A stretch of DNA of 64,000 nucleotides from Styela clava (lineage: Eukaryota): assembly GCF_964204865.1 (NCBI RefSeq), contig NC_135251.1, positions 9,858,001 through 9,922,000 on the forward strand, written 5' to 3'. The translations under genes and the position numbers were made by a program. Each line of letters begins with the position of its first letter. Within the stretch, counting starts at the first letter, position 1. The notes below the pieces were generated by a model, which saw only the letters and a program-made list of their open reading frames with translations, was not told where the DNA came from and did no database searches. Below, one piece after another: positions 6,401 to 58,135 of this stretch.

Positions 6401-7932
6401 TTTTGATATTATATTGTTGTTGTTGTTTCTCTTGTTGTTAGCATGTTTATTTTTCGTCTGGATGGAATAATCGCTTTTCCCTTTAGCTACTGGTTTAATC
6501 AACTTTAAAATTTTCCGGGGTTAAAAATTGTTTTTGTCTCAAAGGTTATTACTTGTAATTTTCCTAAATGTTTCTGTGAGATCTGATATTTCATCCAAAA
6601 TCTACTGTTTCATTTTTAACCATGGGAACACGTTTATGTGACATTCTCACGGCTGGTACTGGTAGTCTACTGTGTTCGATTGCATACTCGCATTACAGCG
6701 TTTTGTACCTCAGGTCCATGTATTATAGCACAGCTCTCTTGTTGTTATCCAGATCTGAATTTTCTGAAACATCCATAACTGTGAAACTTGGCGATGAAAT
6801 TACCAGTGGCTGTGATGTCACAGACAAGAGCGCAAAAAATAGCATTAATCATTACGACGCAAAGAACTGGCAGCTTGTAATTGGGAATAGCTACAGGTAA
6901 TGCTATATATCTCAATGAGCATTCTGATGGCCCATAGCCCTATCAAATAACAAATGCAGATGAAGCGTACTAAAGAATAACGACATGATTCTGCATAGAG
7001 AGATAAAAATAGTTCATTCAATTTCTATTTCAGTACTTACGTTGTAACAACAAGTCCAAATGAAGAAGAAACGGTATTGTTTCAACAAAGCTCTATAGAA
7101 GAATTTGAGAATGGAAGTTCCGATTCGGGAACCGGTATCATTGACTGAACCATCACAATAAAATTTTTATAAAACCCTCTTTTATTTAGTTATTTAATCA
7201 ACTAGTTGCTTTCATGCTAAATATAAAGAAATGTAACATCTATTTTATTTTTAACAGATATGGCATGGATAGCTGGTGTTGTGGTGGGTATAGTTGCTCT
7301 AGCTACTCTAGTGGTTGGTGCAATTTTTTACACGAAACGTCGCCAACAACCTGAAAATAGAGAATCGTCGCTGACAAGTTCAAAGAGTACCTCAAAGGAT
7401 CATACCGACCTTTACGAAACTACGGGGTATCAAACAGCTGGAAATCCTGATATATCATTAGTAAAAGATACTGATATAAGTATGATAAAAATAAGTTTTG
7501 TATATATTTGTATTAACTTTGTTAAAGCAGTATGAATAAAACAACATCCCGTTTTTATGTACTTTGTGGATTTGACTATGTGGAGTTCCAAGTGTCGAAC
7601 ATTTTAGTATTTAAGCAAAGCACTATTCCACTGTATTTGTGAAAATGAATAGAAAATATTTGTCACAGATCTTAGAAATTAATTCATCACTGAACTAAAA
7701 ATAATAACCAAAAACATTTTTTCCAACTATTGCGATAGTGTAAAAGCAAACATACCCACAAAAATTTGATTTATATTTATACGCAGTTTTATGAATTCAA
7801 AATTATATTAGTTTATATATAACACATGAAAATTCATATAATTTCACAATACTTTTAAGGTAAACGCTAACAACTAAATTCATATTCATAGATCAGCAAC
7901 ATATATATTCTACAATACCTGGAGTTGGATAG
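583..7932 (+). CDS. Gene 1 (5'-partial): EGF x4 - FN3 x2 - RPTP-type juxtamembrane domain - TM - short tyrosine-motif tail; phosphatase-less paralog of gene 3
   Basis: Phase-consistent GT-AG exons: 583-708, 908-1033, 2520-2645, 3349-3474 (EGF, each 126 nt, 6 Cys); 3720-3819, 4712-4838, 4955-5137, 5397-5604 (FN3, e.g. NLYPDSQYDIK, EPNRIYNFDVSA); 5754-5853, 6073-6213, 6753-6896, 7034-7134 (NEDNGPISCVFVVV); 7258-7479 (TM WIAGVVVGIVALATLVVGAIFY then KRR); 7892-7932 (QQHIYSTIPGVG, TAG). Exon sizes match gene 2 exactly from FN3 through the TM exon. Confidence 0.88.
4060..4670. mobile_element. Palindromic MITE, Tc1/mariner-like ends
   Basis: Left end caggatgtctcaaaa, right end ttttgagacaccctg followed by ta. 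Long imperfect inverted arms (gtatggataagtagtaaaatttag vs taaattttactacttatccatac; actcagcgcct vs aggcgctgagt). Absent from the paralogous gene 2 intron 25679-25940. Confidence 0.8.
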
Positions 7933-33652: not shown

Positions 33653-36600
33653 ATGCACATTGGTGTAAATTTGAACATGAGAAAGATAACTTGGACAAGT
33701 ATCATTGTATTTGTGTCAATATTGAAAACTGTGAGGCCTCAAGGTATGTATCGGAGTTTATTTTTACATGACCTCATACACGCCCAGTTGTATCAGATTG
33801 AGCTGGTTTTAGTTAACAACAATTGGGAAACTAGTACTTTATGAGAGTAATTTGAACGAATAGACTCGTACTCGACCGTCAACCGTCAAAACCGTCAAAA
33901 CAAATAACAAAAAAGCCTTGATGAATTACGATTGGGCACGTATGTAACTGTTGCATGACAAAAGTTTGCATAATTGTTAGTGTTATAACTTTGTAAGGGT
34001 CGTGTTTATGAAAAGAGTTAATATTTTACTGTTGTTTATAACGCTAAATTTGGTAGAACACATCCGGATTGACTTGTGACTTGATTGTACAGTGACAAGA
34101 CTAGAGTTAAAATCCTCAAAAATTTTCCGAAGTTGAACTTGACTCAATACTCGATTTAATTCAGGATTTGGAGATTTGTAACGAAAACTGAGGTAAAAAG
34201 GGTTTTTGGGTATTAAAGTTGAACTATTGTAAACATAAGTTGTGCGTTTATCTGCTACAAGTGATGACGTTTGACAATAAAACAGAGTTATGATTCGACA
34301 TTAAGTCTTCTGTTACATTTCAACAACAATAGTACACACGTGCATTATCTTCATAGCTACTATGAATTGAAATCAATTAAAATAATTGTTTAGACTCGCT
34401 ATAATATTCGCATCATTTTTTGTATATTAATACAACATTTATGCACGTTTAAGATTTCTTATATTAATACATCTCCCATATTACTGTTACGTACGTATTT
34501 TTAGATGCAACAAAATTTTATGATGGATATCTGTTCGAAAGATTCGACACAGAAAAGTTATCAAGTGACGCGGAAAAGCAATGCACGGTCCGAGGAGCGT
34601 GGCTGTTTGAACCAAAACCCGATGATCTATTCAACGAATTAACAGATAACTTTTTGTGAGCCAAAATTCATTGAACTTGATAATATTTGGTTCTGAACAT
34701 TTTTTTGGTGTAAAACCACAATAAATGCACCATTACACAGGCGACCTTTTTTCAAATACTTTGTTAATATCATATAACAATCTTTAAACGTTATTCGTTT
34801 ATTTTTCAATATGTATTTGTTTGTAGTGGTGACTATTATGAGTCGTTGGGACATGTAGTGCAATGAGTTTCCACTCTTTATTACCTTATTTATATATCAC
34901 TATTGTTATGTATATCGGTATATCGGTATAGTTCGGTTTCATCAAATTTTATGATAAGTATTAGTTGAATGTCGCAATCAATCAAACGCTATTGCCAAAC
35001 AAGTGGTTTCGCCTGTGTTAATTAAACAGTTACATCCAATTGATGACTTGGTTTGCATATAGTTAATTCACCCACGCTCGGTGTATCCGAATGACCGAAA
35101 ACTGGTGACATCACTAGGTTCACACTATCTCTGATCAAATAAAAAAAGGAAATACGAGAGAGAATGAATAGGCGAGAAGCTCTGTCGTTTTCACCGTGGC
35201 ACTCAATGGTAAAACGTAAAAACTTGAGCATGGAACGGATAGCTTTTATCATTAATATATAATACTCAACGATGACTCATTTTATAGTTTGATATATTTA
35301 TGACTTATATTGTGCTTTAAATGTAATAACTCGAAAGATTGGTACAATAGAATAACATTAAAAACTCACTAACTATGTTAACTCAAGTGATTTCAACAAC
35401 ACAATATGAGAGATAAAATTATTTTCAATCGGTAAAATACTAATCGGAACAATGGAATACCAGAGAACTATTCCACGGTTTCAAATGTTTTAAATAAGCT
35501 TGTATAGTGTTTATGAGACAGATATTTGTTAAATAGTAGAGTAAACTCCTTGTAAAAGTTGAAACATTGAATTGTTCATGAAAGAATATTTATATATTTC
35601 AATCAGACCGGCAAATGGTGGATATTATCTTATGGGTCTCAGGAAGCTTGACGGTTATTGGAAATGGAGCGATTACAGTGATCCGACAACTACTCATTGG
35701 TGAGCTCGTTTAAATTAGTGCAAAGTATATTTTAATATTAATATAAAATCAATTTGAACGATCCATTTTTGAAATATCGGTAAATTTGTTGTTAATGAAA
35801 TATTTGCTGGGTTGATTGAAAAAACGGCTATACCCCACTAAAACAAAACATTGTTAAATAAAACAAGAGAGCTATGACCAAATATATGGACACGTCTGTT
35901 CGCAGTACAGTACGGTTTACCGTACCGTCAGATCACAGTCTACAAATATATTCACACCAAGCGAAGCAGTACAGTAGGACACAAAATGGCGTCCGATGTC
36001 CGCAGAACGTTTTATGACTTCATAGCAAACAAAAACAAATCTCACAGTGCTAACAGGAATATTTAAAATGAATAAAAGTAATAGCCTTCTGGGAAAAAAT
36101 TTTATCTTCAACCACTGAAAATTTTAAAGCAATTGGTCCAGTATTCGAAGAAAAAAGCGATTTTTTCAAAAATGATGGAGACAAATAACAATAATACAAA
36201 ATTTTGAAACGATCGTTATGTCCACTACGTGTCCAATAAAAAACAAAAAGCAACATCACAAAGGTTTCATTGATTTTTAAATACACGTGTACAATATTCG
36301 GGATTTTAGTATGCGTGAGGATTTTGAAAGTATACAAACGCATAGATCATATTTGTCCAATTTAACAGTTGTATTTAACATTAGTATAAGGCTTTACAAA
36401 TAATTTATACTCAAGTATGATTAAACAGGTTAACTACCGAAGAACCAGGCGAGAGTGGTCAAGCTTGTGCATGTGTTCGGAACAAAAAATGGGTTAGCGT
36501 GATCTGTTCTACAACTCCAAGAAGATACGTTTGTCAATCCCGTGAGATTATAATTTGTACATACTGTTACTTGCTCGACTCTGGAGTAGGGAATGCATTG

Positions 36601-39600
36601 CCTTGCAATCAAATGAATCAAATGATCAAATGATAGTTAGTGCACGCAATGTTTTCTATGTGTTTTATAAATTTACAGCAAGATAGTAGAAGCATTCCAG
36701 AAAATGTAAAAACATAACGAGACCGTATAACTTCTCTGTGTAGAGGAAGTGTGTGGAAACATTTCAAAAATGTAACCACAAAATCACTGCTGAACAACTG
36801 ATAGATACTTGGGTAATAGCCAGAATTTTGCAATGCATGGTAGCACAATTGAACCGATTTATACGTTCAAACAGTCGTAATTTCTCCACTTATCAAATTA
36901 TGTTTATATTTTATATTTATTTGTGTATATTTAGTTCAACCTCCATCCTCAACAATAATACTTTATGGAAATCTTCTGGAAAGATTCGCCGAAGAGGTTC
37001 AGAATTATGCAACTGCTAATGATAGATGTGCAATGAGAGGTGCTCAGTTGGTTGAGATAAAGGATAAAACTATGGACGATAAAGTAATTGAATGGATTGG
37101 GTGAGTGATAAGTAAAGTACAAAATCTAATTTCAGTCATGAATGATATGTCAGATGTTATTGCGAGTCTTAACAAATCATACCCATTACTGCAGGTCTGA
37201 TACAAGATCTTACCTGATGGGAATACAATATTCGACATCAAATGATGTGTGGGAATACAACAGCGACAACACAGCAATCACCTATGATAATTGGTATGTA
37301 CTCGAAGCTTGGTTCATACATTCATATATCGAAATAAAGTATGATTTTAATAAACAATTCGTATTTGCGCTGCAAATGGGCAATATCTTGACAATCTAAA
37401 CACACTATTAAGAATACTTTTTTGCGTCAATATAGTGTTGATCATTTGTACAATACCATTTTATTTATGAGCTTATCGACCTTCCATAGTAATAAAATCT
37501 GTTTAAATGGCAGGTCGTACTTCATTTGTAAATTAGGTTTTACGTTTGAAAAGGGCTCATTGCCTTTTTTGGTTTGAATTTGAATATGCCGAAAAATAAT
37601 ACCATTTCACTTTGATAACGGGCATATTGTATTTCATTGTACGTCGCGAAGTTACTGTGAAAATGATATCAAATTTGTAAATTTGTTGTCTGTAGAGCAA
37701 GTATCAAAAATGCAGCAACAAAACTGAAAACATATGAACAATATAATCCGTGGTATGCGACTAGGATTTACAGTCATGATTTTTTAAAAACTTCATGACA
37801 TATGAAAATCTGATACATACTTCAGAATGGTGAACTCTGATAAGAAAAAGTGGTTTAATTATAACCGGGGCATTTATATATGTTTATTTCATGTAGGGCG
37901 CTGATAACAGTCTCGAGATATTATTATTAAATAAATAAAAATTCATTGACAAATATTATTTTAAACAATACCGATAACACGCATAAAATATAAGATTGTA
38001 TGTTTCAACGGAAAATACATTATTCAGTCACATTTCCAATTAAATATACCTGGTACATTTCCCAGGTTTATCTGCTAGTCTGTAACACAATATGAATATT
38101 AGCTCTAAGTAATATATAATAAGAAACGTCGACATCTGGTGTTTTCGCTTGTCGGAAAGAATCGGGGTGCTAAGTGGGCTTCAGCCAAGATAATGTTTCC
38201 TTATTTTAAAATAAATATTCTACGTCTGTTATTAATTTAAAGATGAGAGAATATTATTGATTCGAACATAAATTTTAACTTAAAGTCATATTATTTATTT
38301 TTTGTACGACGCCTATTCATACTTCCACTTAAATCCATATGACTATCAACGAAACTATAAAACTTAATCTTCATTCAATGACTCGTATGTATTTGTTTAC
38401 ATTGTAGGAAAACAGGTGAAGGTCATGATTCCAACGAAGACTGTGCTTGTATACTAAGTGACGGATGGATCGATGATGTTTGTAGTGGTGGTACATTCAA
38501 ATATATCTGTCAGTCGTGTAAGTGAGTGATATAGAAATGATACAAAAGTTCCTGTCAACACATTTTGAACTGGGTAAAACACAAAATAATTGAACGATTT
38601 GTGATATTGTAAAAACAATTCAACTGCAGGAATTCAAGGTTCTTTTTTGTTGTACATTGCGCATGCGTCATATTATTTGCAGTTGCCACTGGATTTAATT
38701 TGCTGCCACTTACAAATAAAATATATATTCGGTATTTAATTTCGTATATCAAAATGTGGTCGTTATAACTCTAAACTAATAAGTATTAACCAAACCTGTA
38801 CTTGAATTAAAAAAGACTACTGACAGATCCTAACCTATGTTCGAAGAAAATGAGCCGTTCTCAAAAATCGGCATCTAAAGCTTAACATTCATGCGGTAAA
38901 TTTGATAAACATTTCATTCAAAAATATCTTGCGTGAGATATAAAGAGTTTATTATCAGTTTATTAATTGATATAATTATAAAATCGTATCCCGATTCATA
39001 TGCTGCTGTTTTCATCATTATCGATACCGATCTAATCTATTATGTTCTTACATCAAAGATCCGAGTGAGGCAACTACTTACAATGGAGATCTTCTTGAAA
39101 AATATAACAATAAAATAGGAAATGCAGCAGCAAGGAGTAGATGCTCATTGTGGAACGGCAATCTTGCTGATGCAGAATATGCGGCATATAACAAGGCTGT
39201 GCAGAATTTGATCGGGTATCTTTGTTTTATTCAGTGTGGTTCTCGGTATTATGACATTGGTTTTGCATGCTTTACTATGAGTTTTAAAGATGAATTACGA
39301 CTAATCAGGCCAATCATTAATCTATCGTAACGTTACAATCTACTATTAGGTTTATGACATGTCAAATAGGCATCTGTAGATTAGTACTATTTGTAATATT
39401 TTGCGAATTGCAAACAGATACAGACTTCATGCATGCATTTGTAAATCATTTCTCAATATTGTTATCACAGAAATGGAGACTTTTATCATATCGGATTGAA
39501 ATATTTTGATGGGGCATATCGATGGACAGATGGATCAGCAGCAACTTACTTTGATTGGTAAGATATTATTCAGCCGTTTTGGCATTTGACATCAGTAGTC

Positions 39601-42600
39601 GATGTTTAAAATTTACGTTCAGAACTCATTATCATACTCGGTTCAATAATCTATATTGTGTAATCCTGACATAAATCGCAATACCATAGAATAAGGACTC
39701 AAAAATATTATACTGAAGTCTAAAACTTGTAGACTTTGAATAAAATTGCACAAAATGTTCGTTTAATCGCCCTCCAATTACCACTCGTATTTGATTGAAT
39801 GTAAATGATATTTATGTGGAATTTCATTTTGAAAGTAATTACGACGTCAAAACAATACTTACATATTTTTATGATAAAAAGCAAACTAAGTATTCTGAGC
39901 TTTTTCAATCTGACAAAAATTATATTTCTTTCTAAATGACGTAAGAATTTAACTAAAAAAGAGTTGTCTGTATGAATACATAATATATATACGAAGATAA
40001 TCAAATCAATTGACGTAGTGAATATAAATAAACATGTTGAATATTAATGACAGCAATTTAAAAAATTTATGAACTATAATGAAATCAAATTTATAGGGAA
40101 ACTGGCGAAGGATCCGATATTGGCAAAGATTGTGTTAGGACCAATCAAAAATCTTGGCGTGACACAGTGTGTGGGGGCCCAATAGGATATATATGTCAAT
40201 CTACAGGTAATATGTAACAAACGGTATTTCATTTCTTTTATCATAAGTAAAAAACTGAGGTTTTTGACAAACCTAAACGGCCTGCAATAGTATCCGAATT
40301 TATATCCTTCATATGACAATTTAAAAATTTAAATCAGTATTTTTTTTCACTGTAAATATCTGATCTAAAACGACACTGAATTAAAATTCCACCATGCTTA
40401 ACAGGACAATAATAATCACGAAGCCGAAACTATTAGCCTTAGCGAGAAAATATATTTTTACTGTATCAGTTTTTTTTATCGGCATCTGCCAATAAGTAAT
40501 AAAATGTTATCGCCTCATTCTGTATTTTTGAAATTAAAAGACCCATGAAAAGTGTAAAACTTTCAAATTTTCTTTGATCGATCTGTTTAGCTTATTGCAC
40601 GGGCAAATCTGGCACTTGTCAAAATGGAGGAAGTTGTGTGTCTTTTAGATGGTGTGAATGCGCAGATGGATTCTACGGCGATACCTGCTCAAGCAATGGT
40701 GAGTTTATAGTGATGTATTGAATTGTCTACATCTTTCCAACATGGAGCAAGATACGAGCGTAAAAAATCTAAGATCGACATTGGTATTGTTATGAAACTG
40801 AAATAATAAGCACTCAAAATGAAAAATCTGTTTGCAACTAAGAGACTCAATATGACATCATAATATCATTTAAATAGTGCACGAAACATTCAATATTTCT
40901 TACATCCGAAAAATGTGTGCATGGCTAAGACGATACTACTAAACGCCTCGCCAATCCTATAGGCAGTGCAGTTAGATAACTTATCAAACACATTATAGCC
41001 AATCATTTTCTAATTGATGTTAACAGTTCAGGTTAATATTATATCACATTATTATTTTTAGAATACTGTCCGAATAATGTAAATCCGTGTCAAAATAGAG
41101 GAAGCTGCGAGAATATGCCAGGAACCGATCCATACTATAAATGTAATTGCAAGCCAGGATATTTCAACGTCACCTGTTCTAGTGATGGTGAGTAACAATT
41201 TTAAATCTATTTAAAGTTCACTTCAGATTTGGAAATTCGAAATGGGTGGACCTTCACTAAAGCATTGCATTATTGTGCTTAAGTTTTAAACTCGAGCAAT
41301 TAACATATATTAGATTCATTCGCTTGGTCTAATTTATTTTAAATTTTATTTACTTTTATGCTTTATCATCAATAATAAGTCTACGTATTTTATTGTTCGT
41401 TTGAAACTATAGTGTTGAAATCTGCATAATTGATGTCAATGACCAAGGTGACTATAACAGACTCATTTTGATGCCTTTCATTAATTTTTGCGCTAACTGT
41501 TAATCTATCGCAATGTAGGAATCTTACTATAATTCAATTAAATTTTGTACGCGATTATTACGTCATAGTATTTAGTAATAGTCAAATTAATATACGTTTC
41601 GAGTATTTATCTCCCTCCTGCATCGTATTTGGAAATGGCAAGAATGGAACTAATAAAAATTTACCTTCATATTTTAGAATACTGTCCAAACAATCCAGAC
41701 ACTTGTCAAAACGGGAGCTGTAAGAATACACAAGGGGAGGATCCGTATTATGAATGTGACTGCATGCCGGGTTTCTTCGGATATAACTGCTCTAGCGATC
41801 GTGAGTATCGTTAACTTGATTCGAGACGATTTCGCAATTCTTTTACGTTATTTTACTTAAAGTGGGGTACGCCATCATAGTGAATACAATAATCTGAAGT
41901 ATAAATTAATTGATTTACATCAGAGGTGTCATGTCGGCTACTACGACAATACATGATTTCTGCAGTCGACGGTGACAAACTATACTTTTTGAATATAAAT
42001 TGATATACCGTAAAAACTTACAATACGAACAGAAATACAATTTATAACGTTTAATTTTACTGAAACTAAGTTATTATGATTCTTTTATTGATTCAAATCA
42101 AAGCAAAATAGGTATTTTTGTTTCCTCGTAAAATTCCTTCACAAAATAAAGGTATTTTTTAAGCCATAAATTCACATTTTGTGAATTTAGTAATTCAGTC
42201 ATTTAGTACAATGATATATTAATCTTAGCGGTTGAGAATATGTAAAGTTATAAAATAGGCATGACTACACGAACAAGGTTAATGATATGCCACGTATAAA
42301 TTTCAGAATACTGTCCCAACAATGAAAATCCGTGTCAAAATGAAGGACGCTGCGAGAATTCACCAGAGATATTTCCATACTATGAATGTGCTTGCAAGCC
42401 TGGGTATTTCAACGACACCTGTTCTAGCGATGGTGAGTAACAATTTCGTAGTTTGTTACTTATCGATCTTAAGATCGGTAAGTATGTTGATAGGTATTTG
42501 TCTGTTTGTCTGTCTGTCTGTTTGTATGTTTGTCTGTTTGTCTGTTAGATAAACGCGATATCTCACGCGTGGTTGAATCTGCTCCAAATTTTGCATGTGC

Positions 42601-48600: not shown

Positions 48601-51600
48601 TTGCTATTCCCAGGTAAACGAGGCAATACAATGCTAGATAGGAATGAAATTATTTGGTGATGAACCCGCTTTATTTTATTTAGAGCTACGATAGGAAACG
48701 ATAAAATTTATACGACGACGCTTGGTGATGATGAAATAAATTTAGAATGCGATCTTATAACAATATGGTCAAGCAAAAATATAAAGAAACGCAGTGCACG
48801 AGCTACTTCACAATATTCAGGGAATAATTGGCCATTGAAAGCCGATGGGGCGTCCTATAGGTAGGTTGTGTTTTTTCCTGTAAGACCTTTTAGTTTGTAA
48901 AAATAGATCATAGAAGAAAATTTGAAATTGTAATGAACAAAATTATAGTTTTCAAAATAAGTTGTACCAGGTATAGATAGACACATATCTATGTAAGCCA
49001 TATATTACATTCTGTTAAAGCTTCTACACGGTGACCTCAACTCCAACAAGCAAAGACGTAATATTTGGCAAAAGTGAAATTACCTCATTTGTCAATGGGT
49101 CTGTGCGTGAGTAGTTTAATACTGCAATACAAATTTTGAAATCGGTAGTTCAATTATTAAAAAAAGGTTTACTTATTTGAAATAATTACAGCATTTTTCA
49201 GAATTAGGCCATAAAGCATGCATGACGAGTCTGTGACACCTGCTGACTACATCTACCTATTTATTTGCATACAAATAACAAAATTGTGTTATTAAGATCT
49301 AGCATTATAAATCAAGTATAAAATATCAATGTCATTATTTCAATTTTATTACAGCTATGGGATGGATTGCGGCCGTTGTTATATGCCCTATTCTTATTAT
49401 AGTGATTATGGGAGGAATGTATTATATGTGGAAAAAGTAAGTACATTATAACTAGGAGTGTTTCTCAATCAATTGGAATCTTGTAATTGGGAAAGCATCG
49501 TAAAGCATTGTGAAGTTTTTCATTCAGCCAACCTAACGGTGTATTTTTCTTAATGTGCCGTTTAATCAGATTTCTTTGTCCACCCCGAAAATCTACATCT
49601 AGCGTTACATCTCAAAGAAAAAATTCTCAGAATAACAAGAGACATTTATTTAACATAGCCCACAAATTAGAAATTAAAAATTTTGAGCTACTATAAATCA
49701 ATTATTTGACAGGCGTCAAGCAAAGAAGATTCCAGATGATTATGCAATGGGAAATCAGCCAGCTACTAATATACCAGGTAAGTTTAATACTGATACCCTG
49801 TAAATAAATTTGAAATTATCAAACCCGTGCTTGGGAAATAGACTTAGGATTATCACAGCAACAAAAATAAAGAAAATAAACAAACAATTGTTAAATAATA
49901 TTTTTTTAAAAATGTTTTTATTAGATGCGCCACTATACGAGAATGTAGAAAGTATTACAAGACCTGAAACGGATATTCCATTAGGAATGCTCCATAGTGT
50001 TTACAAGATGCTGAAAGCTGATGAGAACATGCAGTTTCGTGAGCAATACCAAGTAATATACTAAAGTTGTTCAAGCAATAAATATTTATTTTAGTTTTGA
50101 AACAACAATCGCATCTCTTTCTAATATCTATTTTTTCATGTATTACATGACAAAATCGAAATATTTTATAACGGTATTCAATTCAAGTACACAAAATTAC
50201 AATATAAAGATAATTTCTAGAATAATATTACACGCCTCATATATATGTAATTTTAGAGAGATTATCTATTTAACGTGGTAGATAATTGAAGATTTTAACA
50301 AAATGAGAATAAAAGGTTAATATTTGTTCGTTATAAAATATATACAATGTTATTCTTTTATTATTATGGTGTTAAATCGGTATTCATGAATCAATTATTT
50401 GTAGGAGATCAAAACAAAATCCAAAGCAAATGCTCCTCCGACAACGGTAGGGGGAAGTGAAGAAATGATGACGAAAAATAGATACAAAAACATATTGCCG
50501 TGTAAGTTATATTAAATCTTTAAAGAAATATCTGTTTTGTTTTTCCAAGCTTTGTAATTTGCTAATTGCAATTTAATATAAAATCTGGTATCTGGCGCAC
50601 CGGCTCAAATTTAACAAATTTACAAGCGCAATAACCCACTAATAAATCCAGACATATAATAGAACAATTTAAATTCCCAACATGGTACACGCGGATAAAT
50701 CAAAAAGCTCATGTTTAATTTTTATTTTAATCATTTTATACCGTCTTTCATAGACGATACCTCCAGAGTTTCACTGAAAGGACAAGGGGTTGATGGATAC
50801 ATAAATGCTTGCTACGTCAACGTGAGTACAAAACGTGATAACATGACAGCGGCTATATGCGATGTTATATATTTATGGGGAAAAAGGGAATTTTTCTAAC
50901 TAAAATAATTATGATTCGAATAAATTAACTTGGCCAACTACAGATTTTAAAAAGAGTATATGGTCGTCTGGAGAATTTTAGAGTTTCATAAATAAAATAT
51001 TATATACAAATTTAAACCAGGGCATTAAGAAGCAATTTATTGCGACACAAGGACCTCTACTAAACACGAAGGCGGATTTTTGGAGAATGGTAGTTGAACA
51101 AAATTGTACAATAATTGTGATGTTAACAAAATGCGTCGAGGCTGGAAAGGTATTTTAACTAAATAACTTTTTAAAAATATTGCGTTGAGATTTGCAAGCA
51201 CACCCTATACTAAACGTTGAGATATCGTAATTATTGCTATGTATAGCTAAACGTTATAAGTTGATTTTGCGTCACCAAAACAAACAGAGCAATTTAACGA
51301 TTATTTATCTTGGCTGTGGTATGTTGACTCATTATGTAACATATGATTTTTGCCTCTGTTCTTATTCAACTTCTATTTTAAGGACATTCGTTTTTTTCCT
51401 ACAAATAATTACAACTCTTGTTTTATTTTCTCGTGCAAACTCATGATGAAATTACCGATTACCATTTTATATTATATTTATACATAAACAGATAAAATGC
51501 GAGCAATACTGGCCAAACGTTAACGAATCAGTTCAACAAGGATCCTTCATTGTGAGAAATGAACAAGAAATATATTACGGTGGATTTGTACGAAGAATTC

Positions 51601-54600
51601 TTGTTATTCAAACACCGCATGATGTAAGCAGCAGTCAATTTATTTTATTTGAGTTCCAAGCGCAATCCCATACATGGATTAGCGTTTAATGGAAGGTACA
51701 ACCAGATGAAGAGCTAATAATTGTAAATAGGCCTAATATCTTTAGCCATGAGCTCTTAAACAATGTGACAATATCGTATTAATAACCTTAAGCTAAAGCA
51801 AAATATATCTAAAACAAAATAGATTGTTCATTATTTTCGAAATAGGCTACACACTTGCAATAAATAATTTGAGCATAGTTTGACTTTGTCAGCTAAATAT
51901 TGTAGGCCAGTCAGTCGTTTATTAGTATTTTGAATTCGACTTCAGCACTACTTTTGATTTTTTTATGTTATTGTATGTTGAGATTAAAAACAATAATCTA
52001 ACAAATGCATTGATCATGTACATATTCATTAATAAATAAATAAAATTATTTTATATTTTTCTTTAAACGTTGCTACAAAAAGTTTGATGAAGTGAGGTTT
52101 AAAGAGAAATATAAATTTTTTTTTTTTATTTATCAATGAATATGTGCATGATCAATGCATTTGAACAATAACATGAAAGTAAAATTTATCAAAAGTAGTT
52201 CTGAAGTAGAATTCAAAATACTAACAAACGACTGACTGTTTCGAAAGTTGAATAGACTTTGTTTTATTGGTATAACTAGGTTTCGGAAACTGTATACAAC
52301 TGGGAAATATAATATTTCGATAAATATCGCTGGGATGTTAAGCCTCATAATATTGTGCGTTGAATAGTTATTATTAGCAAACCTTCACTCACCGATGTTA
52401 TTTTTTCATTTAGAAACACATTACCGTTCAACAATATCAGTTTTTAAAATGGCCAGATCATGGAGTCCCTGTAACAACTTCAAGTTTCTTTCGTTTACAA
52501 GAAGCAGTCATGGAAACGTATGGAAAAACTCGATGCGATGCACCTATTCTAGTTCATTGCAGGTTTGTATAATATCCATAATAATTGACAATTTCATCTC
52601 AATCAAAATAGTTTCCCACAAACAAATTGTACATAGAAACTCATATTTATGATCAATCCTCATTTCCAATCCAAAATATTTTAATGTAATTTCGGTATTT
52701 GTGCAGGATCACTCCAATAACCTTATGAGATTTACTGACGAATTACCTCCGTTACTTCTCCAGTTTCAAAAATAAGCAGTAACAATTCAACATTTTGTTT
52801 AATAAAATTTTACAGTTGAAGTTCATGAAAGAAAGTCTGCAATAACAAAAAGGCTCATATTTCATAACTAAATAAAATTTAAAATTCGCAGTTAAGTTTT
52901 GTTACACAATCTTGCACACTCGTTTTAGCGCCGGAGTCGGACGAACGGGTACGTTTATTGGTTACGATATACTGCAAGATCAAGCCAAAGACAAAAGCAG
53001 CGTGGACGTATTTAATTGCGTAATGAAAATGAGATCACAGCGCGTGGATATGGTACAAACATGTGTAAGTATTTCAATTTTTATACTAAATATTTTACAG
53101 AGCTAACAAATGTAAGAAAGAAATAATTTACCAACTAATATGTCTTTTTTGGATTTTTTCTACACTTATACCAGCCGTTGCCATCATTTTCATTGCTATG
53201 AGCCCTTTTAATGACTTACCTGACAGATGAACATCCCTTTAAAAAGTCAATACTGTTTCACTGCTAGAAACAATACTTAACGTCAGAATTTCACAGAAAA
53301 ACCTTTGAATTATAGTATGATGAAAGATATGTTCTAACGGAAAATGTCTTTCGTATGAATGGGATATTTCACAACAAAGCACATCAAGCTTTTCATTGGA
53401 CTTGGTCTAATTTAAAGTAAATTTGATGAATATTTATGTATATGAACATGTACAGAACTCATATGAGCAACATCTTGTGATATCCCATAGCATAGCCTGG
53501 TACGCATTCGCCACGATTTTTCGTCCTCCAGGCACCATTTTAGGTACTTTTTTTTGCTATTATGTTTTCATCTACTGTAAGTATGGTATTATTTTAATCT
53601 TTCTGTTCGCCCACAGAGATCGTATTGTTTCCGGCTTTGAACTACGGGCTGATATGGGAAATATTTTGTAAATTACGAAATTACTGAGAATCGATCAATT
53701 CTCTTTCTGACCAACACTTTCACTTTGAATATTACTATATTATAAATCGTAATATAGAATCGATTGGAGGAGCATACAACTTTCATTTTATTGTTTGGTT
53801 TTGCATTTTGTGACGTTGCACATACAGGACCAATATGATATGCTTCATAAATTGATGTTGGAACGGTATATGTTTGGCGAAACTGACGTCACGCGAGAGC
53901 AATTTATCGTAAATCAACAGACAGGCAAAGGGTAAGAGAAAAATACAAATATTTAACTTCTAAATATGGCTTATGCACACTGCAAAGTGAAAGAAGTGAG
54001 CGACGAGACATCGATACTATGATGTTGCAATATGTACAATCCTGTGTTATTGAAACATCCATTTTGTAAAGAATAATTGACTTTATAAATCTATGATTTT
54101 ATTCCGAAGGGTCAATGACACATTGGGTAAAATATCACTGGTGTGATTAAAAGATGACACGAAATATAAGAAAAATTGACCTAAATATTAAGTTTGCGTC
54201 GCCGCGCAACAACTCAATAAGTGTTTTAAAATAGTGTGATCACCTAATAAAATTGTCATGGGTTACGATGAAGTTAAAAAGTATTTTTCAGATCTACTAG
54301 GAAACCAAATATTCAGAAGGAATTTGAAAATCTAGCTTCCGCAGAGTCCTTGAACCAAACGAAAAAGGAAGACGACCATGTTCCGAGTAAGTGAGGTGTA
54401 ACTATTAAAGTTATATTAGAGTCAAAGATAGTTTTCATAGATTTGTCAATAATAAGAAAATATCAGATCAGGTGATATACGCTGTTACACTCAGTGTTTC
54501 TATTACAACCAGAATAATCTATAATTGCATTTCCCTAAGAAATATTCGAATAGGTATACCATGATCAGAAAAAATCACAATTTTAACAATAGTGTATTGC

Positions 54601-57600
54601 ATTTAGGAATTAGAAACCGAGTGGTTATCGTCAGACAGCCAGAAGATACGGAATGGATATCGATTGACGCCAACTATATTGAGGTCAGCATAATCTAATT
54701 TTTATCACAAAAATGATTTTGTAACCATGTGTGGTGATATTTATTTTCTGGGCAACAAAGACGGTATAATTATATAGTCCATAAATATAATACTTTGTCA
54801 AACAGGACGCATTCCCCTGTATCGTGCGAGGTAAAGTAAATATGCAATGGTACTTATGCAAACGTCAGGACATTAGTCACATTACGGCACTGTTCAAACA
54901 AAATCACGAATTACCATTACATTCTCAATGCTGACACCTTGCGGCGTTCTATTATTTAGAATGCTTAAATAATAAGTCAAATGCCTATACTGCCTGTACA
55001 GAAAGCTTTGTGCCAAAATGGATATTTGTGCAAATTTGCAGTATATGCAAGAATATGATTATGAGAAGAAAAGTATCTTGAAAAAGTACAAATTCTAACT
55101 TAAGTGCTCTATTTCTGACTAAATTTATTCTCATTAAACCGCGAAATAGCTTGTTCTAAAAAATAGCATGTTCGCAAAGGTACGTTTAACAATTAAGATG
55201 GTTGCGAACATTTGTCTTTGTAAAACTACAATTTTACAAAACTCTGTTTTTGCAGAATTACAATTTCGCGCAAGAACCTTTTCATACAAATATATTCTTA
55301 CAAAAATCCTTTTGCGCAAAATTTGACCCACATAAGTCGACCGCTGCTAATGTATGTCTTGCAAGTTGGCTTCTCCGATACTGAGGGGAATTTTCAGACT
55401 AGAAATATCATTGTAAGAATAAAATTGATGCCTACAAATTGTTACAAATGTATAAATTGGATGATTCTACATTTACAATAAAATAACAACAACATATTTG
55501 CAGGCATACAACAAAAACGCTCAGATAATTGCGGCACAAGGGCCTTACAAATCGACAGTAGAATATTTTTGGCGGGCAGTCCTAGATAATAGCGTGAATA
55601 CAATAGTGATGGTTGACGCCCCTGGAAATGATGCCACTGTAAGTATAAAATTTATTTATTCCAATGTTGTCTTTAAAAGATTCACTCAAAGCAATTTTAG
55701 GAGTCAACAAAGTTATACGAGTCAAAAACATTTTAAGGTTGTGGATATCAAGGCTATAAAACGTTTAGTTGAAAATCATTGACAAAGGAATGAAAAGTAG
55801 CACAAAATAATTTTAATCAAAATATCAAACATAAACAATTTTAGATATACTCTATTAGGCGATATCCCTCTTGAAGAATGAAAAGCTATCAAATAAGATT
55901 ATATGCATATCAGGATGTACAAAATTAGGAAGTTTGAAAGAGATAACTAAATCTAAGTTGAAGTCTATGAAGACAAAAATCGAATATTCTTCTGTACTCA
56001 GTTACTATCAATTTTATTACTTGCAGAATCGAATAAAACAAACTCGCAACATTTGTATTCAGGAGAACCTGTATTTGAATTAATATTTATTTCCACAGTC
56101 ACAAGATGAATCAGTCTGCTACTGGCCAAAATCGACTAGTGAGACGCTCCAGCTAAACTTCATAAAAATTCAACTTGAAGCGGAAAGTCGACGAAGAGGA
56201 AACATTGAACGGAGATTCAAAATTTTAAGGACAAACCAACCACAAAGGGTGATGATTTGAAATAAATATCATGAACGGAATTATTAAACGATTGATATAA
56301 ACATAACTTTTCAATATGTTGCAGATTGTTACGCAGTATCAATATCCAGATTGGAGTTTAAAATCGGTACCAGAGGATGCTACAGGAATACTTGATCTTG
56401 TCTATATGTTACAATCAGACTCTACATGGGAGACAAACGGTGCAACCATGGTTCATTGCAGGTAAAGAATTATAACTCAGTAACAACGACTTCTCCACAA
56501 ATAATGCAGCAACCGAGCAAACAGCAATGAAATCATTCAATTCGCAAAATATGCCCTTGCTTCTGTGGCTATTGCGTATGGGAATTTTTATATAATGGTC
56601 AAAGTGAAGTTTGTGGTGAATTGAAATAACTTCTTTAAGTCACTTCCCCAAACTTTAAGTTTCTATTTTTTTTTTCACCAATGATGATTTATCATTGAAA
56701 AACGAAGATTATATAAGATTTGTAAATTTTAAAGTGATGAAACTTAACAATCATTCAGTAATCAGTGGTTTATTTTCTCATAATACTAAAAGCACACTTG
56801 ATGTACAAATTGCACTAAATAACTAAAAAGCATTTCAGGGTGAGGGGAGCCGCGGGAAACCAAATTTGGTTATCGAGCAGTGGCACCCATAAGCTAGTCT
56901 GAAAAGAAAATAATAACAAAAAGTCGAAATGTATATGTTGTTTTGAAAAAATCATCAATAATTGAGTTCAATTTGGCGAAGACCTATAGTGTCATCCATT
57001 GTCATTCTATGCGATTCTCCAATGAATTAGTGCGGTCATATCGTTGTGGAATTGTTGGGTTCTGAAATCTAAAGCATTTCAAGAAAATTCTGTTTGCGTG
57101 TTATACCCACGTACTCCACTCGTTTAATCAAGTTTAAGATTTGCTTATAATCCTTATCTCGACGTATGGCATTTCAAATTAGCCTATGTATCAGTATCTA
57201 CATAGGTCAATAGAAAATTTATTTTTGTTGTTGTTGTATAGATGGATGGAAGAATCGATACCCGTGCGATAAATGTAATTTGAAGTCGTGGAAGGCTTGT
57301 TTATTAATCTCATATTTATCATTTCAGTGACGGATTGGGGCGTACTGGTGTTTTCTGTACCATTTTGAATGTTATAGACAGATTGAAGTATGAAGGCCGT
57401 ATCGACATCTTCCGCACTGTTAAAGATTTGAGAGATAATCGGCCTGGGATGGTAAAAACACTGGTATGTCTTTATATAATATTGTACAAGTATGTTTGAT
57501 TATTACTTAGTTTTACGACAAAGTAAACAACAAGCTATGAACCATGAAAATAAATATTCTTTTGTCCTGATATGAAATTTATCAGCATGAAATAATCCGA

Positions 57601-58135
57601 ATTTAGTTCTTTTAAAAAAGACTCAGGAAAGAGTTGGACGAATTGTATTAGTCTAGTTCACGGGTGGGTAATGTTTTTGGAGCAGGGGCCAAAAATTTTG
57701 TCGACCTAAACTGGCGGGCCATGCAAGTGTGACGTAAATGATTTATTTTATATGTGCCACAAATATTGTATTATTTTAAAACAGCAACGCTTTTTTTTGC
57801 ATACAAGACACACTTCGGTTAATCCAACTAAGTTAGCTAGCGTTATGGGGGCGTTAACACAACTTTGTTGGCACTAAATTTAATCTTGAGGTTTGCGTGA
57901 CCACACAAGCGCACGAGCATCAGACTGCACCAATTGAATAACTCAGCGGACCGGATTTGCCCCGGTCGTTTAGCTGCTGTATATAATGATTGGAAATTTA
58001 TGTTAAACATTCCAGGAGCAATACAATTTCTGCTACAAAGCGGTTAAGACGTATTTGTCTTCAACTAACGTGTACTCCAATGATGCGCTCGAAGTGGAAG
58101 AAGAAGACCAAGATCCAATTTATGAAAACGTCTAA
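33653..58135 (+). CDS. Gene 3: receptor-type protein tyrosine phosphatase, SP - CTLD x3 - EGF x6 - Ig x2 - FN3 x2 - juxtamembrane domain - TM - PTP D1 - PTP D2 (~1847 aa)
   Basis: 43 phase-consistent exons, sum 5544 nt: 33653-33743; CTLD 34505-34655, 35607-35699, 36429-36541, 36935-37100, 37195-37293, 38408-38517, 39059-39215, 39471-39557, 40097-40206; EGF 40591-40698, 41062-41187, 41678-41800, 42307-42432, 43844-43969, 44976-45095; Ig 45418-45699, 46154-46459; FN3/juxtamembrane 46609-46717, 46794-46908, 46986-47162, 47511-47718, 48038-48140, 48479-48613, 48684-48860, 49021-49106; TM 49355-49436; 49713-49777, 49925-50052; D1 50405-50501, 50754-50821, 51021-51149, 51492-51623, 52414-52562, 52929-53064, 53828-53931; D2 54292-54386, 54607-54683, 55504-55638, 56099-56248, 56325-56461, 57328-57463, 58016-58135. 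Confidence 0.9.
35863..36237 (-). mobile_element. Helentron-associated (HINE/DINE-1-like) non-autonomous insertion
   Basis: Inserted in an A-run that is uninterrupted in gene 2 (~15402-15425). Subterminal inverted repeats tggacacgt / acgtgtcca; no TSD. Confidence 0.5.
42454..42726 (+). mobile_element. HINE/DINE-1-like element, copy 1
   Basis: 5' subTIR cttatcgatctta (42459-42471) with an adjacent palindrome, (GTCT/GTTT)n microsatellite, 3' subTIR taagatcgataag (42685-42697), terminal hairpin tcggtc-tcc-gaccga (42701-42715), inserted in a T-run. Confidence 0.78.
42824..43217 (+). mobile_element. HINE/DINE-1-like element, copy 2 (longer)
   Basis: Same 5' end, microsatellite and 3' hairpin (tcggtttccaaccga) as copy 1, with extra internal sequence. 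A reverse-oriented 3' end of the same family starts at ~44170. Confidence 0.78.
43229..43446. mobile_element. Short piggyBac-like MITE
   Basis: Flanked by TTAA (43225-43228, 43447-43450) with degenerate CC.../...GGG ends. Absent from the paralogous intron at ~21250-21290. Confidence 0.5.
45418..46459 (+). other. Two Ig-like domain exons found only in gene 3
   Basis: 46154-46459 is canonical I-set ([11 protein letters not shown]...TWLING...[12 protein letters not shown]). 45418-45699 is a Cys-less Ig-like exon ([17 protein letters not shown]). Both are phase 1-1. Confidence 0.8.
50405..53931 (+). other. PTP D1 domain with all catalytic motifs intact
   Basis: [66 protein letters not shown]. 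Confidence 0.95.
54292..58135 (+). other. PTP D2 domain, probable pseudophosphatase
   Basis: IAAQGP, YFWRAV, CYWP and [11 protein letters not shown] are retained. KNRY is absent, WPD is replaced by WSL, and the Q-loop MVQT is MVKT. Confidence 0.85.
57655..57978. mobile_element. Degenerate hAT-like remnant in the last intron of gene 3
   Basis: GC-richer island with ggggcc / gcgggcc / gcggaccggatttgcccgg motifs typical of non-autonomous hAT ends. TIRs not clean. Confidence 0.35.

What the first reader, a model, noticed from the sequence alone, without database searches (positions are those of the whole stretch)
33653..58135. C-type-lectin-headed receptor tyrosine phosphatase with an unusual domain architecture
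CTLD x3 - EGF x6 - Ig x2 - FN3 x2 - TM - D1 - D2 fits none of the vertebrate RPTP subtypes R1-R8, whose ectodomains use Ig, FN3, MAM, carbonic-anhydrase-like or short glycosylated regions. A lectin fused directly to a motif-intact PTP would be a self-contained glycan-sensing inhibitory receptor. Whether similar models are already annotated in invertebrates could not be checked here.
Basis: partly seen in the sequence, partly recalled or inferred. Interest (0 to 1): 0.85.

Follow-up and report, generated by a model that had tools for sequence, protein, structure and literature searches.

The report
Sea-squirt lectin-headed receptor tyrosine phosphatase
This is a real, intact receptor tyrosine phosphatase gene of the sea squirt Styela clava with a lectin-like and EGF head; sea squirts have many such genes, this one is already in RefSeq under a misleading name, and its lectin-like domains lack the usual sugar-binding residues.

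Summary
On the + strand, 33653-58135 carries 43 GT-AG exons with no internal stop (1844 codons). They encode a signal peptide, three C-type-lectin-like domains (CTLDs), six EGFs, one Cys-less Ig-like module, one clear Ig, three FN3-type domains (not two), a TM segment, a motif-complete D1 and a degenerate D2.

The window is Styela clava. The 36 exons from CTLD3 to the stop match RefSeq XP_077966390.1 ("RPTP T-like") exactly. That model begins at an intronic ATG, has no signal peptide and omits CTLD1-2.

The architecture is not unique. Models with Lectin_C plus tandem phosphatase domains exist in Styela (at least 12 loci), Ciona, Phallusia and Clavelina. In my limited tree they fall in a tunicate-only clade, apart from R4 and R2A. 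I found no paper describing them.

"Glycan-sensing" is not supported: all three CTLDs lack the EPN/QPD and WND calcium/sugar residues.

Two tandem neighbours carry the same head (76-98% identical per exon) on a different stalk, with a short tail and no phosphatase. The head therefore looks recently shared.

RNA evidence could not be obtained. This scan already met the same family elsewhere in this genome.

The parts
33653..33743 (+). First coding exon: start codon (ATG 33653, or 33677) and a signal-peptide-like hydrophobic stretch, phase-1 donor
   Evidence: Six-frame reading. Donor AAG|GTATGT. 86% aa identity to the first exon of the upstream paralogue. Not part of the RefSeq CDS.
34505..36541 (+). 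CTLD1 in three exons (34505-34655, 35607-35699, 36429-36541); sugar-site positions read EPG and WVS
   Evidence: Colinear tblastn to the Pfam-verified Lectin_C domain of P0013 (E 2e-7, 5e-3, 2e-3). dN/dS against gene 2 is 0.48.
36935..38517 (+). CTLD2 in three exons (36935-37100, 37195-37293, 38408-38517); positions read EGH and WID; consensus donor T|GTAAGT at 38517
   Evidence: tblastn to P0151 and P0013 Lectin_C (E 4e-6, 5e-6). dN/dS is 0.24. Donor sequence read.
39059..40206 (+). CTLD3 in three exons (39059-39215, 39471-39557, 40097-40206); positions read EGS and WRD
   Evidence: 100% identical to P0272 residues 14-130. ESM Atlas Lectin_C clusters at 0.93. Weak Pfam Lectin_C, E 0.088. PDB profile hits are CTLDs only.
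40591..45095 (+). Six single-exon EGF domains, all phase 1-1 (40591-40698, 41062-41187, 41678-41800, 42307-42432, 43844-43969, 44976-45095)
   Evidence: Pfam EGF/EGF_2, E 5e-7 to 5e-3; five of the six pass the cut-off. Exact match to P0272.
45418..45699 (+). 94-aa Cys-less module with an Ig-like motif pattern ('Ig1'); fold not verified
   Evidence: No Pfam hit. hhalign against Ig2 gives probability 0.2. AlphaFold pLDDT 45, all-beta. Exact match to P0272.
46154..46459 (+). Ig domain (I-set/Ig_3), single phase 1-1 exon
   Evidence: Pfam Ig_3 3e-12, I-set 6e-11.
46609..47718 (+). Two FN3 domains, two exons each (46609-46717 + 46794-46908; 46986-47162 + 47511-47718)
   Evidence: Pfam fn3: 4e-3 on a piece and 1.4e-8 in P0272 at 678-758.
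48038..49106 (+). Membrane-proximal FN3-type domain in four exons (48038-48140, 48479-48613, 48684-48860, 49021-49106); contains a dibasic KKR, a candidate convertase site
   Evidence: ESM Atlas Fn3_PTPRU clusters at 0.91 and 0.90. Protein-level homology to the same exons of genes 1 and 2. The convertase site is inference only.
49355..50052 (+). TM exon (49355-49436) and juxtamembrane exons (49713-49777, 49925-50052), with a YENV motif
   Evidence: 23 hydrophobic residues followed by KKR. Weak Pfam Insulin_TMD. Exact match to P0272.
50405..53931 (+). PTP domain D1 in seven exons, with [21 protein letters not shown] and QTxDQY all present
   Evidence: Pfam Y_phosphatase on exon pieces, four above the cut-off (1e-16 to 1e-9) and two below. 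Motifs read directly. P0272 Y_phosphatase 1.5e-129.
54301..58135 (+). PTP domain D2 in seven exons. [10 protein letters not shown] is kept; the KNRY Tyr is lost, WPD reads YPDW, and the first Q of the Q-loop is K. C-terminal ...PIYENV, stop 58133-58135
   Evidence: Pfam on pieces. Motifs read directly. Exact match to P0272.
38537..38573 (+). CDS start of the RefSeq model ([12 protein letters not shown]), 20 nt downstream of the CTLD2 donor, using an alternative donor at 38573; probably an annotation fallback
   Evidence: The ATG is absent at the homologous site in gene 2, and the peptide is not a signal peptide.

Best explanation
This is an intact type-I receptor protein tyrosine phosphatase gene of the ascidian Styela clava. 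It belongs to a tunicate-specific, strongly expanded clade of RPTPs whose ectodomains start with C-type-lectin-like domains.

The protein most likely reads: signal peptide, CTLD x3, EGF x6, Ig-like, Ig, FN3 x3, TM, D1, D2.

- D1 carries every catalytic motif and should dephosphorylate phosphotyrosine.
- D2 keeps the Cys and Arg but has lost the substrate-recognition Tyr and other motifs, so it is probably regulatory.
- The juxtamembrane and C-terminal YENV motifs fit the pYxN type, like the RPTPalpha C-terminal tyrosine. If phosphorylated they would recruit Grb2/Src-type SH2 domains (inferred).
- The head is lectin-like in fold only. None of the three CTLDs has the Ca2+/sugar ligands, so a protein ligand or a non-canonical ligand is more likely than classical glycan binding (inferred).

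The head (signal to EGF5) was recently duplicated or gene-converted between this gene and the phosphatase-less neighbour upstream. The stalk and the phosphatase part have a separate, older history. All the shuffled modules are phase 1-1 exon sets.
For: Gene integrity:
- 43 GT-AG exons with no internal stop.
- 36 of them match RefSeq XP_077966390.1 exactly.

Species and position:
- The window is G000:C2:9858001-9922000, on the 31.34-Mb contig that carries that RefSeq protein.

Domains:
- Pfam, PDB profile, paralogue tblastn, ESM Atlas.
- D1 and D2 motifs read from the sequence.

Family:
- Lectin_C plus two Y_phosphatase domains in P0031, P0013 and P0015.
- PF00059 with PF00102 in at least 12 S. 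clava loci and in Ciona, Phallusia and Clavelina.
- A tunicate-only clade with SH-aLRT 100 holds all of them, apart from the RPTPalpha and LAR clades.
- C-terminal YxN[FIV] is shared with RPTPalpha.

Head sharing:
- blastn shows 92% identity including introns over 36373-39965 against 15624-19209.
- Per-exon aa identity to gene 2 is 76-98% for signal, CTLDs and EGF1-5, but 33-50% (where alignable) for FN3 and TM.
- No phosphatase exons lie in genes 1 or 2.

Coding constraint on CTLD1-2:
- dN/dS 0.48 and 0.24; synonymous against non-synonymous, Fisher p 0.01.
Against:
- The only database model of the locus omits the signal exon and CTLD1-2. It uses a donor 56 nt downstream of the one my model needs.
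- The dN/dS constraint could come from gene 2 alone.
- 'Ig1' could not be verified.
- The tree is a quick LG+G4 tree without R1/R6, R2B, R3 or R5 sequences, and this gene sits on a long branch.
- Ligand, activity and expression are all untested.
Confidence: 0.75

Rival explanations
1. The RefSeq reading is right. The phosphatase mRNA starts in the intron after CTLD2 and encodes one CTLD, EGF x6, Ig and the rest, with no signal peptide. The signal exon plus CTLD1-2 then form a separate small secreted two-CTLD gene, or are untranslated leader exons.
For: - XP_077966390.1 starts at ATG 38537 and uses the donor at 38573.
- If the donor at 38517 is skipped, the CTLD2 frame stops at 38523.
- An AATAAA lies at 38715, inside that intron.
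Against: - A 940-residue ectodomain of EGF, Ig and FN3 modules without a signal peptide is not a workable membrane protein (established knowledge of type-I receptors).
- The ATG is not conserved in gene 2 (ATA AGA).
- The donor at 38517 is a perfect GTAAGT and is conserved in gene 2.
- All phases are compatible and open from 33653.
- The S. clava paralogues P0031, P0151 and P0161 carry a CTLD head on one phosphatase model; three Lectin_C domains were shown for P0031.
Confidence: 0.17
2. It is a classical Ca2+-dependent glycan sensor: the lectin head binds a sugar and switches the phosphatase.
For: - The CTLD fold hallmarks are present (four Cys, WIGL-like YLMGL/YHIGL, W-x-D-x-x-C).
- CTLD1 of neighbouring gene 2 still reads EPN.
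Against: - In gene 3 the EPN/QPD position reads EPG, EGH and EGS, and the WND position reads WVS, WID and WRD. In CTLD1 only one of the five Ca2+-site-2 ligands known from mannose-binding protein survives (residue roles from established CTLD structural work).
- Even gene 2 reads WVS instead of WND.
Confidence: 0.12
3. It is a decaying or non-functional duplicate in a fast-turnover gene cluster. It looks intact but is not expressed.
For: - The family has many decayed copies. The nearest stalk paralogue, at C2:9483205-9493691 (-), has a stop codon in its Ig2 exon and no phosphatase exons.
- Earlier scan notes describe decayed copies elsewhere in the genome.
Against: - 43 exons and 1844 codons have no stop or frameshift, and every intron is GT-AG.
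- The cytoplasmic part is 99.3% identical between two annotation releases, while the ectodomain differs by 2-21% per domain, so the phosphatase part is strongly constrained.
- dN/dS is below 1 in the head.
Confidence: 0.05

Closest known systems
Ascidian CTLD-headed RPTP gene models, e.g. S. clava LOC120336018 (XP_039259559.1), LOC120336894, LOC120335088; Ciona intestinalis LOC100183702; Phallusia mammillata A0A6F9DQN0; Clavelina lepadiformis 'Lar-like'
   Same: - Lectin_C head, Ig/FN3 stalk, TM and tandem D1-D2.
- The same tunicate-only PTP clade.
- D2 signature HCSDGxGRT in most Styela members, and a C-terminal YxN[FIV] in most members.
   Different: - This gene is the only model found with six EGF repeats between the lectin head and the Ig.
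- Its cytoplasmic part is only 45% identical to the nearest paralogues.
- None of these models has been studied experimentally, as far as the held literature shows.
Vertebrate type R2A RPTPs (LAR/PTPRF, PTPRS, PTPRD)
   Same: - Best sequence match of the cytoplasmic region among solved structures: PTPRS 406 bits, PTPRF 392.
- Ig plus FN3 stalk with a PTPRU/LAR-type membrane-proximal FN3.
- Tandem D1-D2.
   Different: - R2A proteins have no CTLD or EGF.
- They have three Ig and four to eight FN3 domains.
- The R2A C-terminus (SFDHYAT) is absent here.
- This gene lies outside the R2A clade in the tree.
Vertebrate type R4 RPTPs (RPTPalpha, RPTPepsilon)
   Same: - Tandem D1-D2.
- A C-terminal tyrosine in a YxN context: YANF in RPTPalpha, YENV here. 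In RPTPalpha this is the known Grb2/Src SH2 docking site (established knowledge).
   Different: - R4 ectodomains are short and glycosylated.
- The true S. clava and amphioxus PTPRA-type sequences group with vertebrate RPTPalpha, away from this gene.
Selectins and other CTLD-EGF cell-surface lectins
   Same: A CTLD directly followed by an EGF domain at the tip of a type-I membrane protein.
   Different: - Selectin CTLDs keep EPN and WND and bind sugars through Ca2+; these do not.
- Selectins have sushi repeats and no enzymatic tail.
Paired immune receptors of vertebrates (KIR, Ly49, SIRP, PILR type)
   Same: Near-identical ectodomain heads on neighbouring genes with different cytoplasmic signalling parts. 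The heads appear to be kept similar by duplication or gene conversion.
   Different: - Here one partner carries the phosphatase itself, rather than an ITIM that recruits one.
- The twins differ in their stalks.
- No immune expression or function is shown. This is an analogy only.

Membership tests
Classical receptor-type PTP (class I Cys-based, tandem D1-D2) | HCX5R(S/T) signature in D1 | tested here: met
   [11 protein letters not shown] spans the exon junction 52562/52929. Pfam Y_phosphatase 1e-9 and 1e-12 on the two exons; motif listed.
Classical receptor-type PTP (class I Cys-based, tandem D1-D2) | WPD general-acid loop, KNRY pTyr loop and Q-loop in D1 | tested here: met
   [19 protein letters not shown] and MVQTCDQY read in the exon translations.
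Classical receptor-type PTP (class I Cys-based, tandem D1-D2) | Single TM helix between the ectodomain and D1; N-terminal signal peptide | tested here: inconclusive
   The TM segment is clear ([21 protein letters not shown] followed by basic WKKR). A signal-peptide-like exon exists at 33653-33743, but its link to the mRNA is inferred and it is absent from the RefSeq CDS.
Classical receptor-type PTP (class I Cys-based, tandem D1-D2) | Phosphotyrosine phosphatase activity | not testable with these tools
   Needs an enzyme assay of recombinant D1.
Ascidian CTLD-headed RPTP clade | PTP domains group with the other tunicate Lectin_C-bearing RPTPs | tested here: met
   A 26-sequence tunicate-only clade with SH-aLRT 100. 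This gene sits inside a 17-sequence S. clava subclade (97), next to LOC120336894 (96). The tree is quick and this gene has a long branch.
Ascidian CTLD-headed RPTP clade | N-terminal C-type-lectin-like domain(s) on the same polypeptide as D1-D2 | tested here: met
   CTLD3 is part of RefSeq XP_077966390.1 together with D1-D2. Its CTLD identity is supported. CTLD1-2 are inferred.
Ca2+-dependent carbohydrate-binding C-type lectin | CTLD fold hallmarks (two conserved disulfides, WIGL-type motif) | tested here: met
   The alignments of the three units show the Cys pattern, YLMGL/YLMGI/YHIGL and W-x-[SD]-x-[IVT]-C...Y-[IV]-CQS. PDB hits are CTLDs only.
Ca2+-dependent carbohydrate-binding C-type lectin | EPN or QPD tripeptide plus WND (Ca2+ site 2 and sugar ligands) | tested here: not met
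   EPG/WVS, EGH/WID and EGS/WRD in CTLD1, 2 and 3. The alignment to ASGPR places its WND opposite these positions.
Vertebrate R2A (LAR type) | Three Ig plus four to eight FN3 and nothing else in the ectodomain; PTP domains in the LAR clade | tested here: not met
   CTLD and EGF modules are present. The gene lies outside the R2A clade (SH-aLRT 100 for R2A without it).
Vertebrate R2B (mu/kappa/T/U; the name NCBI gave) | N-terminal MAM domain | tested here: not met
   No MAM hit in Pfam scans of P0272 or of the exon pieces. R2B D1 structures score lower (about 180 bits) than R2A D1 (236).
Vertebrate R4 (alpha/epsilon) | Short glycosylated ectodomain; PTP domains in the alpha/epsilon clade | tested here: not met
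   The ectodomain has about 1200 residues in the full model, or about 940 in the RefSeq model. The alpha clade (99) contains amphioxus PTPRA and S. clava LOC120339059, but not this gene.

The most novel reading that the evidence does not exclude
Sea squirts run a germline-encoded paired-receptor system in which the 'inhibitory' partner is a complete receptor tyrosine phosphatase, not an ITIM receptor that recruits one. The same fast-evolving, highly polymorphic lectin-like/EGF head is kept on a phosphatase gene and on phosphatase-less neighbours by gene conversion. One ligand (self, non-self or microbial) would then be read out with opposite signs.

The 10-20% ectodomain difference against 0.7% cytoplasmic difference between the two S. 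clava annotation releases would then reflect allelic diversification of a recognition surface.
Probability: 0.2. Interest if true: 0.8.

Novelty: new variant of a known kind. Interest (0 to 1): 0.5.

Why it matters
Receptor tyrosine phosphatases are mostly orphan receptors, and all eight vertebrate subtypes use a small set of ectodomain modules. Tunicates are the sister group of vertebrates. They have built a separate, expanded RPTP clade with lectin-like heads, and here an added EGF array.

In this window the phosphatase gene sits beside phosphatase-less genes that share its head at up to 98% identity. That gives a clean natural case of exon-set shuffling between signalling bodies. It also gives a testable lead for how invertebrate chordates might couple recognition directly to tyrosine dephosphorylation.

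Practical points:
- The RefSeq model of this locus is probably truncated at its 5' end, and 'T-like' is a misnomer.
- The head should not be assumed to bind sugars.

Tried and rejected
Steps that were blocked or left out:
- Joined model. Exons were searched singly by reference, and database proteins (P0272, P0172) served as full-length proxies. The only concatenation was an in-memory stop and length count.

Tests that gave nothing usable:
- Pfam on single CTLD exons: almost nothing, because the domains are split.
- The Ig1 exon: no Pfam hit; AlphaFold with a two-sequence alignment gave pLDDT 45, too poor for a fold search; hhalign against Ig2 was nil.
- The representative search with one D1 exon did not return the locus's own protein. 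That protein was found only through tblastn of the fetched relatives.
- The ectodomain search with P0272 residues 1-960 returned only its own cluster plus generic EGF proteins such as crumbs and Notch. No orthologue with the six-EGF layout was found, and the models of genes 1 and 2 were not retrieved.
- Eight literature searches and three papers read gave no description of a lectin plus PTP receptor.

Readings rejected:
- Membership of R2B (the NCBI name): there is no MAM domain.
- Classical sugar binding: the calcium/sugar residues are absent.


Full report
**What is in the sequence**

The window is AT-rich (about 32% GC) metazoan DNA without gaps. I read the + strand between 33.6 and 58.1 kb in three frames and found a colinear series of short open pieces.

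Pfam scans of single pieces, given by reference, found the following:
- EGF/EGF_2 on six pieces, E 5e-7 to 5e-3. Five pass Pfam's cut-off; the third piece gives 17.4 bits against 21.5.
- Ig_3 at 3e-12 on 46135-46545.
- Weak fn3 hits.
- Y_phosphatase on four D1 pieces above the cut-off (1e-16 to 1e-9), two D1 pieces below it, and two D2 pieces.

A donor/acceptor search that enforces reading-frame continuity between neighbouring pieces gives 43 exons. One exon was corrected. All introns are GT-AG, at 70-1411 nt. The CDS is 5535 nt (1844 codons) from ATG 33653 to TAA 58133-58135, with no internal stop.

The only concatenation was the in-memory count.

**Species and the existing annotation**

I searched one D1 exon against the 1.84-billion-protein representative library. 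The nearest relatives were all Styela clava RefSeq models. tblastn of the fetched relatives against the window singled out P0172 and its cluster mate P0272, which is XP_077966390.1, "receptor-type tyrosine-protein phosphatase T-like".

Every one of my 36 exons from 39059 to the stop occurs in P0272 at 100% identity and in order. The splice sites I derived independently are therefore the ones RefSeq uses. The window is G000:C2:9858001-9922000. C2 has the length of the contig that encodes P0272.

The RefSeq CDS starts at ATG 38537 ([12 protein letters not shown]). This lies 20 nt inside the intron that follows the last CTLD2 exon, and the model uses a donor at 38573. It therefore has no signal peptide and only one CTLD.

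I think this start is an annotation fallback, for four reasons:
- The ATG is not conserved at the homologous site in the upstream paralogue.
- The donor my model needs (T|GTAAGT at 38517) is a perfect consensus and is conserved there.
- A roughly 940-residue EGF/Ig/FN3 ectodomain needs a signal peptide.
- The frame is open and phase-compatible back to a signal-peptide-like exon at 33653-33743.

**Are the three heads C-type-lectin-like domains?**

Each is split into three exons, so Pfam sees almost nothing on the pieces. Only the last exon of CTLD3 gives a hit, at E 0.088. Pfam also misses the complete CTLD3 in P0272 at E 0.01.

Independent support:
- The three units align to one another with the CTLD cysteine pattern, a WIGL-like motif and W-x-[SD]-x-[IVT]-C...Y-[IV]-CQS.
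- A profile of the three C-terminal exons hits only CTLD structures in the PDB, at the right position: ASGPR 0.018, then CLEC4A, CLEC10A and MBP.
- The CTLD1 and CTLD2 exons align colinearly to Pfam-verified Lectin_C domains of the S. clava paralogues. The matches to P0013 have E 2e-7, 5e-3 and 2e-3, and the match to P0151 has E 4e-6.
- P0272 residues 12-131 match Lectin_C clusters in the ESM Atlas, at 0.93 for 28 of 30 hits.

The sugar-binding residues are another matter. The EPN/QPD position reads EPG, EGH and EGS. The WND position reads WVS, WID and WRD. Measured against the five Ca2+-site-2 ligands of mannose-binding protein (established structural knowledge), CTLD1 keeps one. The "lectin" is therefore a fold, not a demonstrated sugar binder.

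**The rest of the ectodomain**

- Six EGFs, each a single phase 1-1 exon.
It has an Ig-like motif pattern ([12 protein letters not shown] ... [11 protein letters not shown]) but could not be verified.
- Ig2 is solid.
- Two FN3 domains follow (fn3 at 1.4e-8 in P0272).
- The four exons at 48038-49106 resemble the membrane-proximal Fn3 of R2-type RPTPs (Fn3_PTPRU clusters at 0.91 and 0.90). There are therefore three FN3-type domains, not two.
- That last domain carries a dibasic KKR that genes 1 and 2 lack. This is a candidate convertase site, by analogy with LAR and RPTPmu processing; it is inference only.

**The cytoplasmic part**

D1 has [21 protein letters not shown] and QTxDQY.

D2 keeps [10 protein letters not shown]. 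It has lost the KNRY tyrosine (IRNRV), reads YPDW where D1 has WPD, and has K for the first Q-loop glutamine. This is the usual picture of a regulatory D2.

Among solved structures the tandem region scores as follows:
- PTPRS 406 bits
- PTPRF 392
- RPTPalpha 349
- RPTPepsilon 333
- CD45 288
- PTPRG and PTPRZ about 258

R2B D1 domains score only about 180 bits, so NCBI's "T-like" and "mu-like" labels are not backed by the catalytic domains.

The protein ends in ...PIYENV and has a second YENV in the juxtamembrane region. A C-terminal YxN[FIV] is shared by most members of the tunicate family and by RPTPalpha (YANF). LAR-type proteins end in SFDHYAT.

**How common is the architecture?**

A search with the cytoplasmic region of a paralogue lists proteins with both PF00059 and PF00102:
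- at least 12 S. clava loci;
- Ciona intestinalis LOC100183702;
- Phallusia mammillata A0A6F9DQN0;
- a Clavelina lepadiformis "Lar-like" model.

All are named "uncharacterized" or "RPTP x-like".

In a maximum-likelihood tree of 41 D1-D2 regions (quick search, LG+G4, SH-aLRT), all 17 CTLD-bearing sequences fall in one tunicate-only clade of 26 (support 100). This gene lies inside an S. clava-only subclade. The clade is separate from two others:
- the RPTPalpha clade, which contains amphioxus PTPRA and the S. clava alpha-type gene;
- the LAR clade.

Caveats: R1/R6, R2B, R3 and R5 sequences were not in the tree, and this gene has a long branch (45% identity to its nearest paralogues).

The six-EGF insertion was found in no other model. 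The genome has many clusters of PTP exons (a lower bound).

Eight literature searches and three papers read turned up no description of a lectin-plus-PTP receptor. The held library is not exhaustive.

**Neighbours**

The window holds two more genes of the same orientation upstream:
- gene 1, partial, from the window's start (first EGF exon near 558) to 7532;
- gene 2, about 11544-28425.

They read: signal, CTLD x3, four or five EGFs, FN3 x3, TM, and a short tail (…DLYETTGYQTAG…). They have no Ig and no phosphatase exons.

Gene 2 and gene 3 share 92% DNA identity, introns included, across CTLD2-3.

Per-exon aa identity between gene 2 and gene 3:
- signal: 86%
- CTLD1: 76-81%
- CTLD2: 94-98%
- CTLD3: 86-89%
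- EGF1-5: 78-88%
- EGF6: 58%
- FN3 and TM exons: 33-50%; one FN3 exon (46794-46908) found no real counterpart in gene 2

The head was therefore recently duplicated or converted between a phosphatase-less gene and the phosphatase gene, while the stalks are old paralogues.

dN/dS between the two heads is 0.48 for CTLD1, 0.24 for CTLD2 and 0.70 for CTLD3. Synonymous changes exceed non-synonymous ones in CTLD1-2 (Fisher p 0.01). This argues that these exons are coding in at least one of the two genes.

The stalk has its own relative 416 kb away on the other strand, at C2:9483205-9493691. It reads EGF, Ig-like, Ig, FN3 x3 and TM at 60-89% identity. It has a stop codon in Ig2 and no phosphatase exons within 21 kb, so it is a pseudogene.

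The older RefSeq model of this gene (P0172, from an earlier annotation release) compares with P0272 as follows:
- D1 and D2: 99.3% identical
- Ig and the first two FN3 domains: 84-89%
- EGFs: 79-98%

This is either strong ectodomain polymorphism or paralogue and conversion differences between individuals.

**Earlier notes of this scan**

One search shows that other windows of this genome were already read as [quoted passage not shown] and as a possible paired-receptor system. The family has therefore been met before in this scan, on other DNA.

I reached the species, the twins and the head sharing independently. The notes add the estimate of about fifty phosphatase-less copies, which I did not test.

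**Verdict**

- A real and intact RPTP gene from CTLD3 onward: about 0.97.
- The three-CTLD, signal-bearing form as the main product: about 0.8.
- Classical glycan sensing: about 0.12.
- A paired-receptor system: about 0.2.

It is a new variant of a known kind. It is a genuine RPTP with an ectodomain type that exists only as unstudied tunicate gene models. It is interesting mainly for domain shuffling and as a lead into tunicate recognition signalling.

Noticed in passing
window 1-7532 and 11544-28425 (+): Two tandem paralogues. Gene 1 is cut by the window start; gene 2 is complete. Both read: signal, CTLD x3, four or five EGFs, FN3 x3, TM, then a short Tyr-containing tail (DLYETTGYQTAG). Neither has Ig or phosphatase exons. 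The head of gene 2 is 76-98% identical per exon to that of gene 3.
   Followed up: partly
window 24122-24311 (-): An inverted copy of an EGF exon, with some flank, lies inside an intron of gene 2. It is 82-86% identical to the EGF2 and EGF4 regions of gene 3. This looks like a relic of exon-level rearrangement.
   Followed up: no
window 40591-43969 against 558-3563 and 19729-25533: EGF exons 2-5 of gene 3 are close copies of one another. Their best matches switch between genes 1 and 2 from exon to exon.
   Followed up: partly
window 42440-43030 (+), intron between EGF4 and EGF5: Two copies of a GTCT/GTTT-rich simple repeat that translates as VCLSVCLSV..., with flanking similarity to 21262-21402 in gene 2. 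Probably a repeat or transposon remnant.
   Followed up: no
G000:C2:9483205-9493691 (-) (loci L002, L006, L009): The nearest relative of gene 3's stalk: EGF x3 or more, Ig-like, Ig, FN3 x3 and TM at 60-89% identity. It has an in-frame stop in the Ig2 exon and no phosphatase exons within 21 kb downstream, so it is a pseudogene. A more decayed Ig1/Ig2 copy lies at 9499957-9501050.
   Followed up: partly
P0172 (XP_039259572.1) against P0272 (XP_077966390.1): Two RefSeq releases of what appears to be this gene are 99.3% identical in D1 and D2, but only 79-98% in the EGFs and 84-89% in Ig/FN3. In places the EGF and CTLD3 exons of P0172 match gene 2 better than gene 3. This could be ectodomain hyper-polymorphism, gene conversion, or a chimeric older model.
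   Followed up: partly
window 48684-48860 (+): The membrane-proximal FN3-type domain of gene 3 has a 7-residue insertion, relative to genes 1 and 2, that creates a dibasic KKR. This is a candidate proprotein-convertase site, like those that split LAR and RPTPmu into two subunits.
   Followed up: no
G000 contigs C1, C2, C3, C6, C10, C13, C14, C17: Exon-level Y_phosphatase hits form many clusters. Examples are C2:10.87-11.45 Mb, C1:24.8-26.4 Mb and C3:17.95-18.24 Mb. This indicates a large expansion of RPTP genes in this genome (counts are lower bounds).
   Followed up: no
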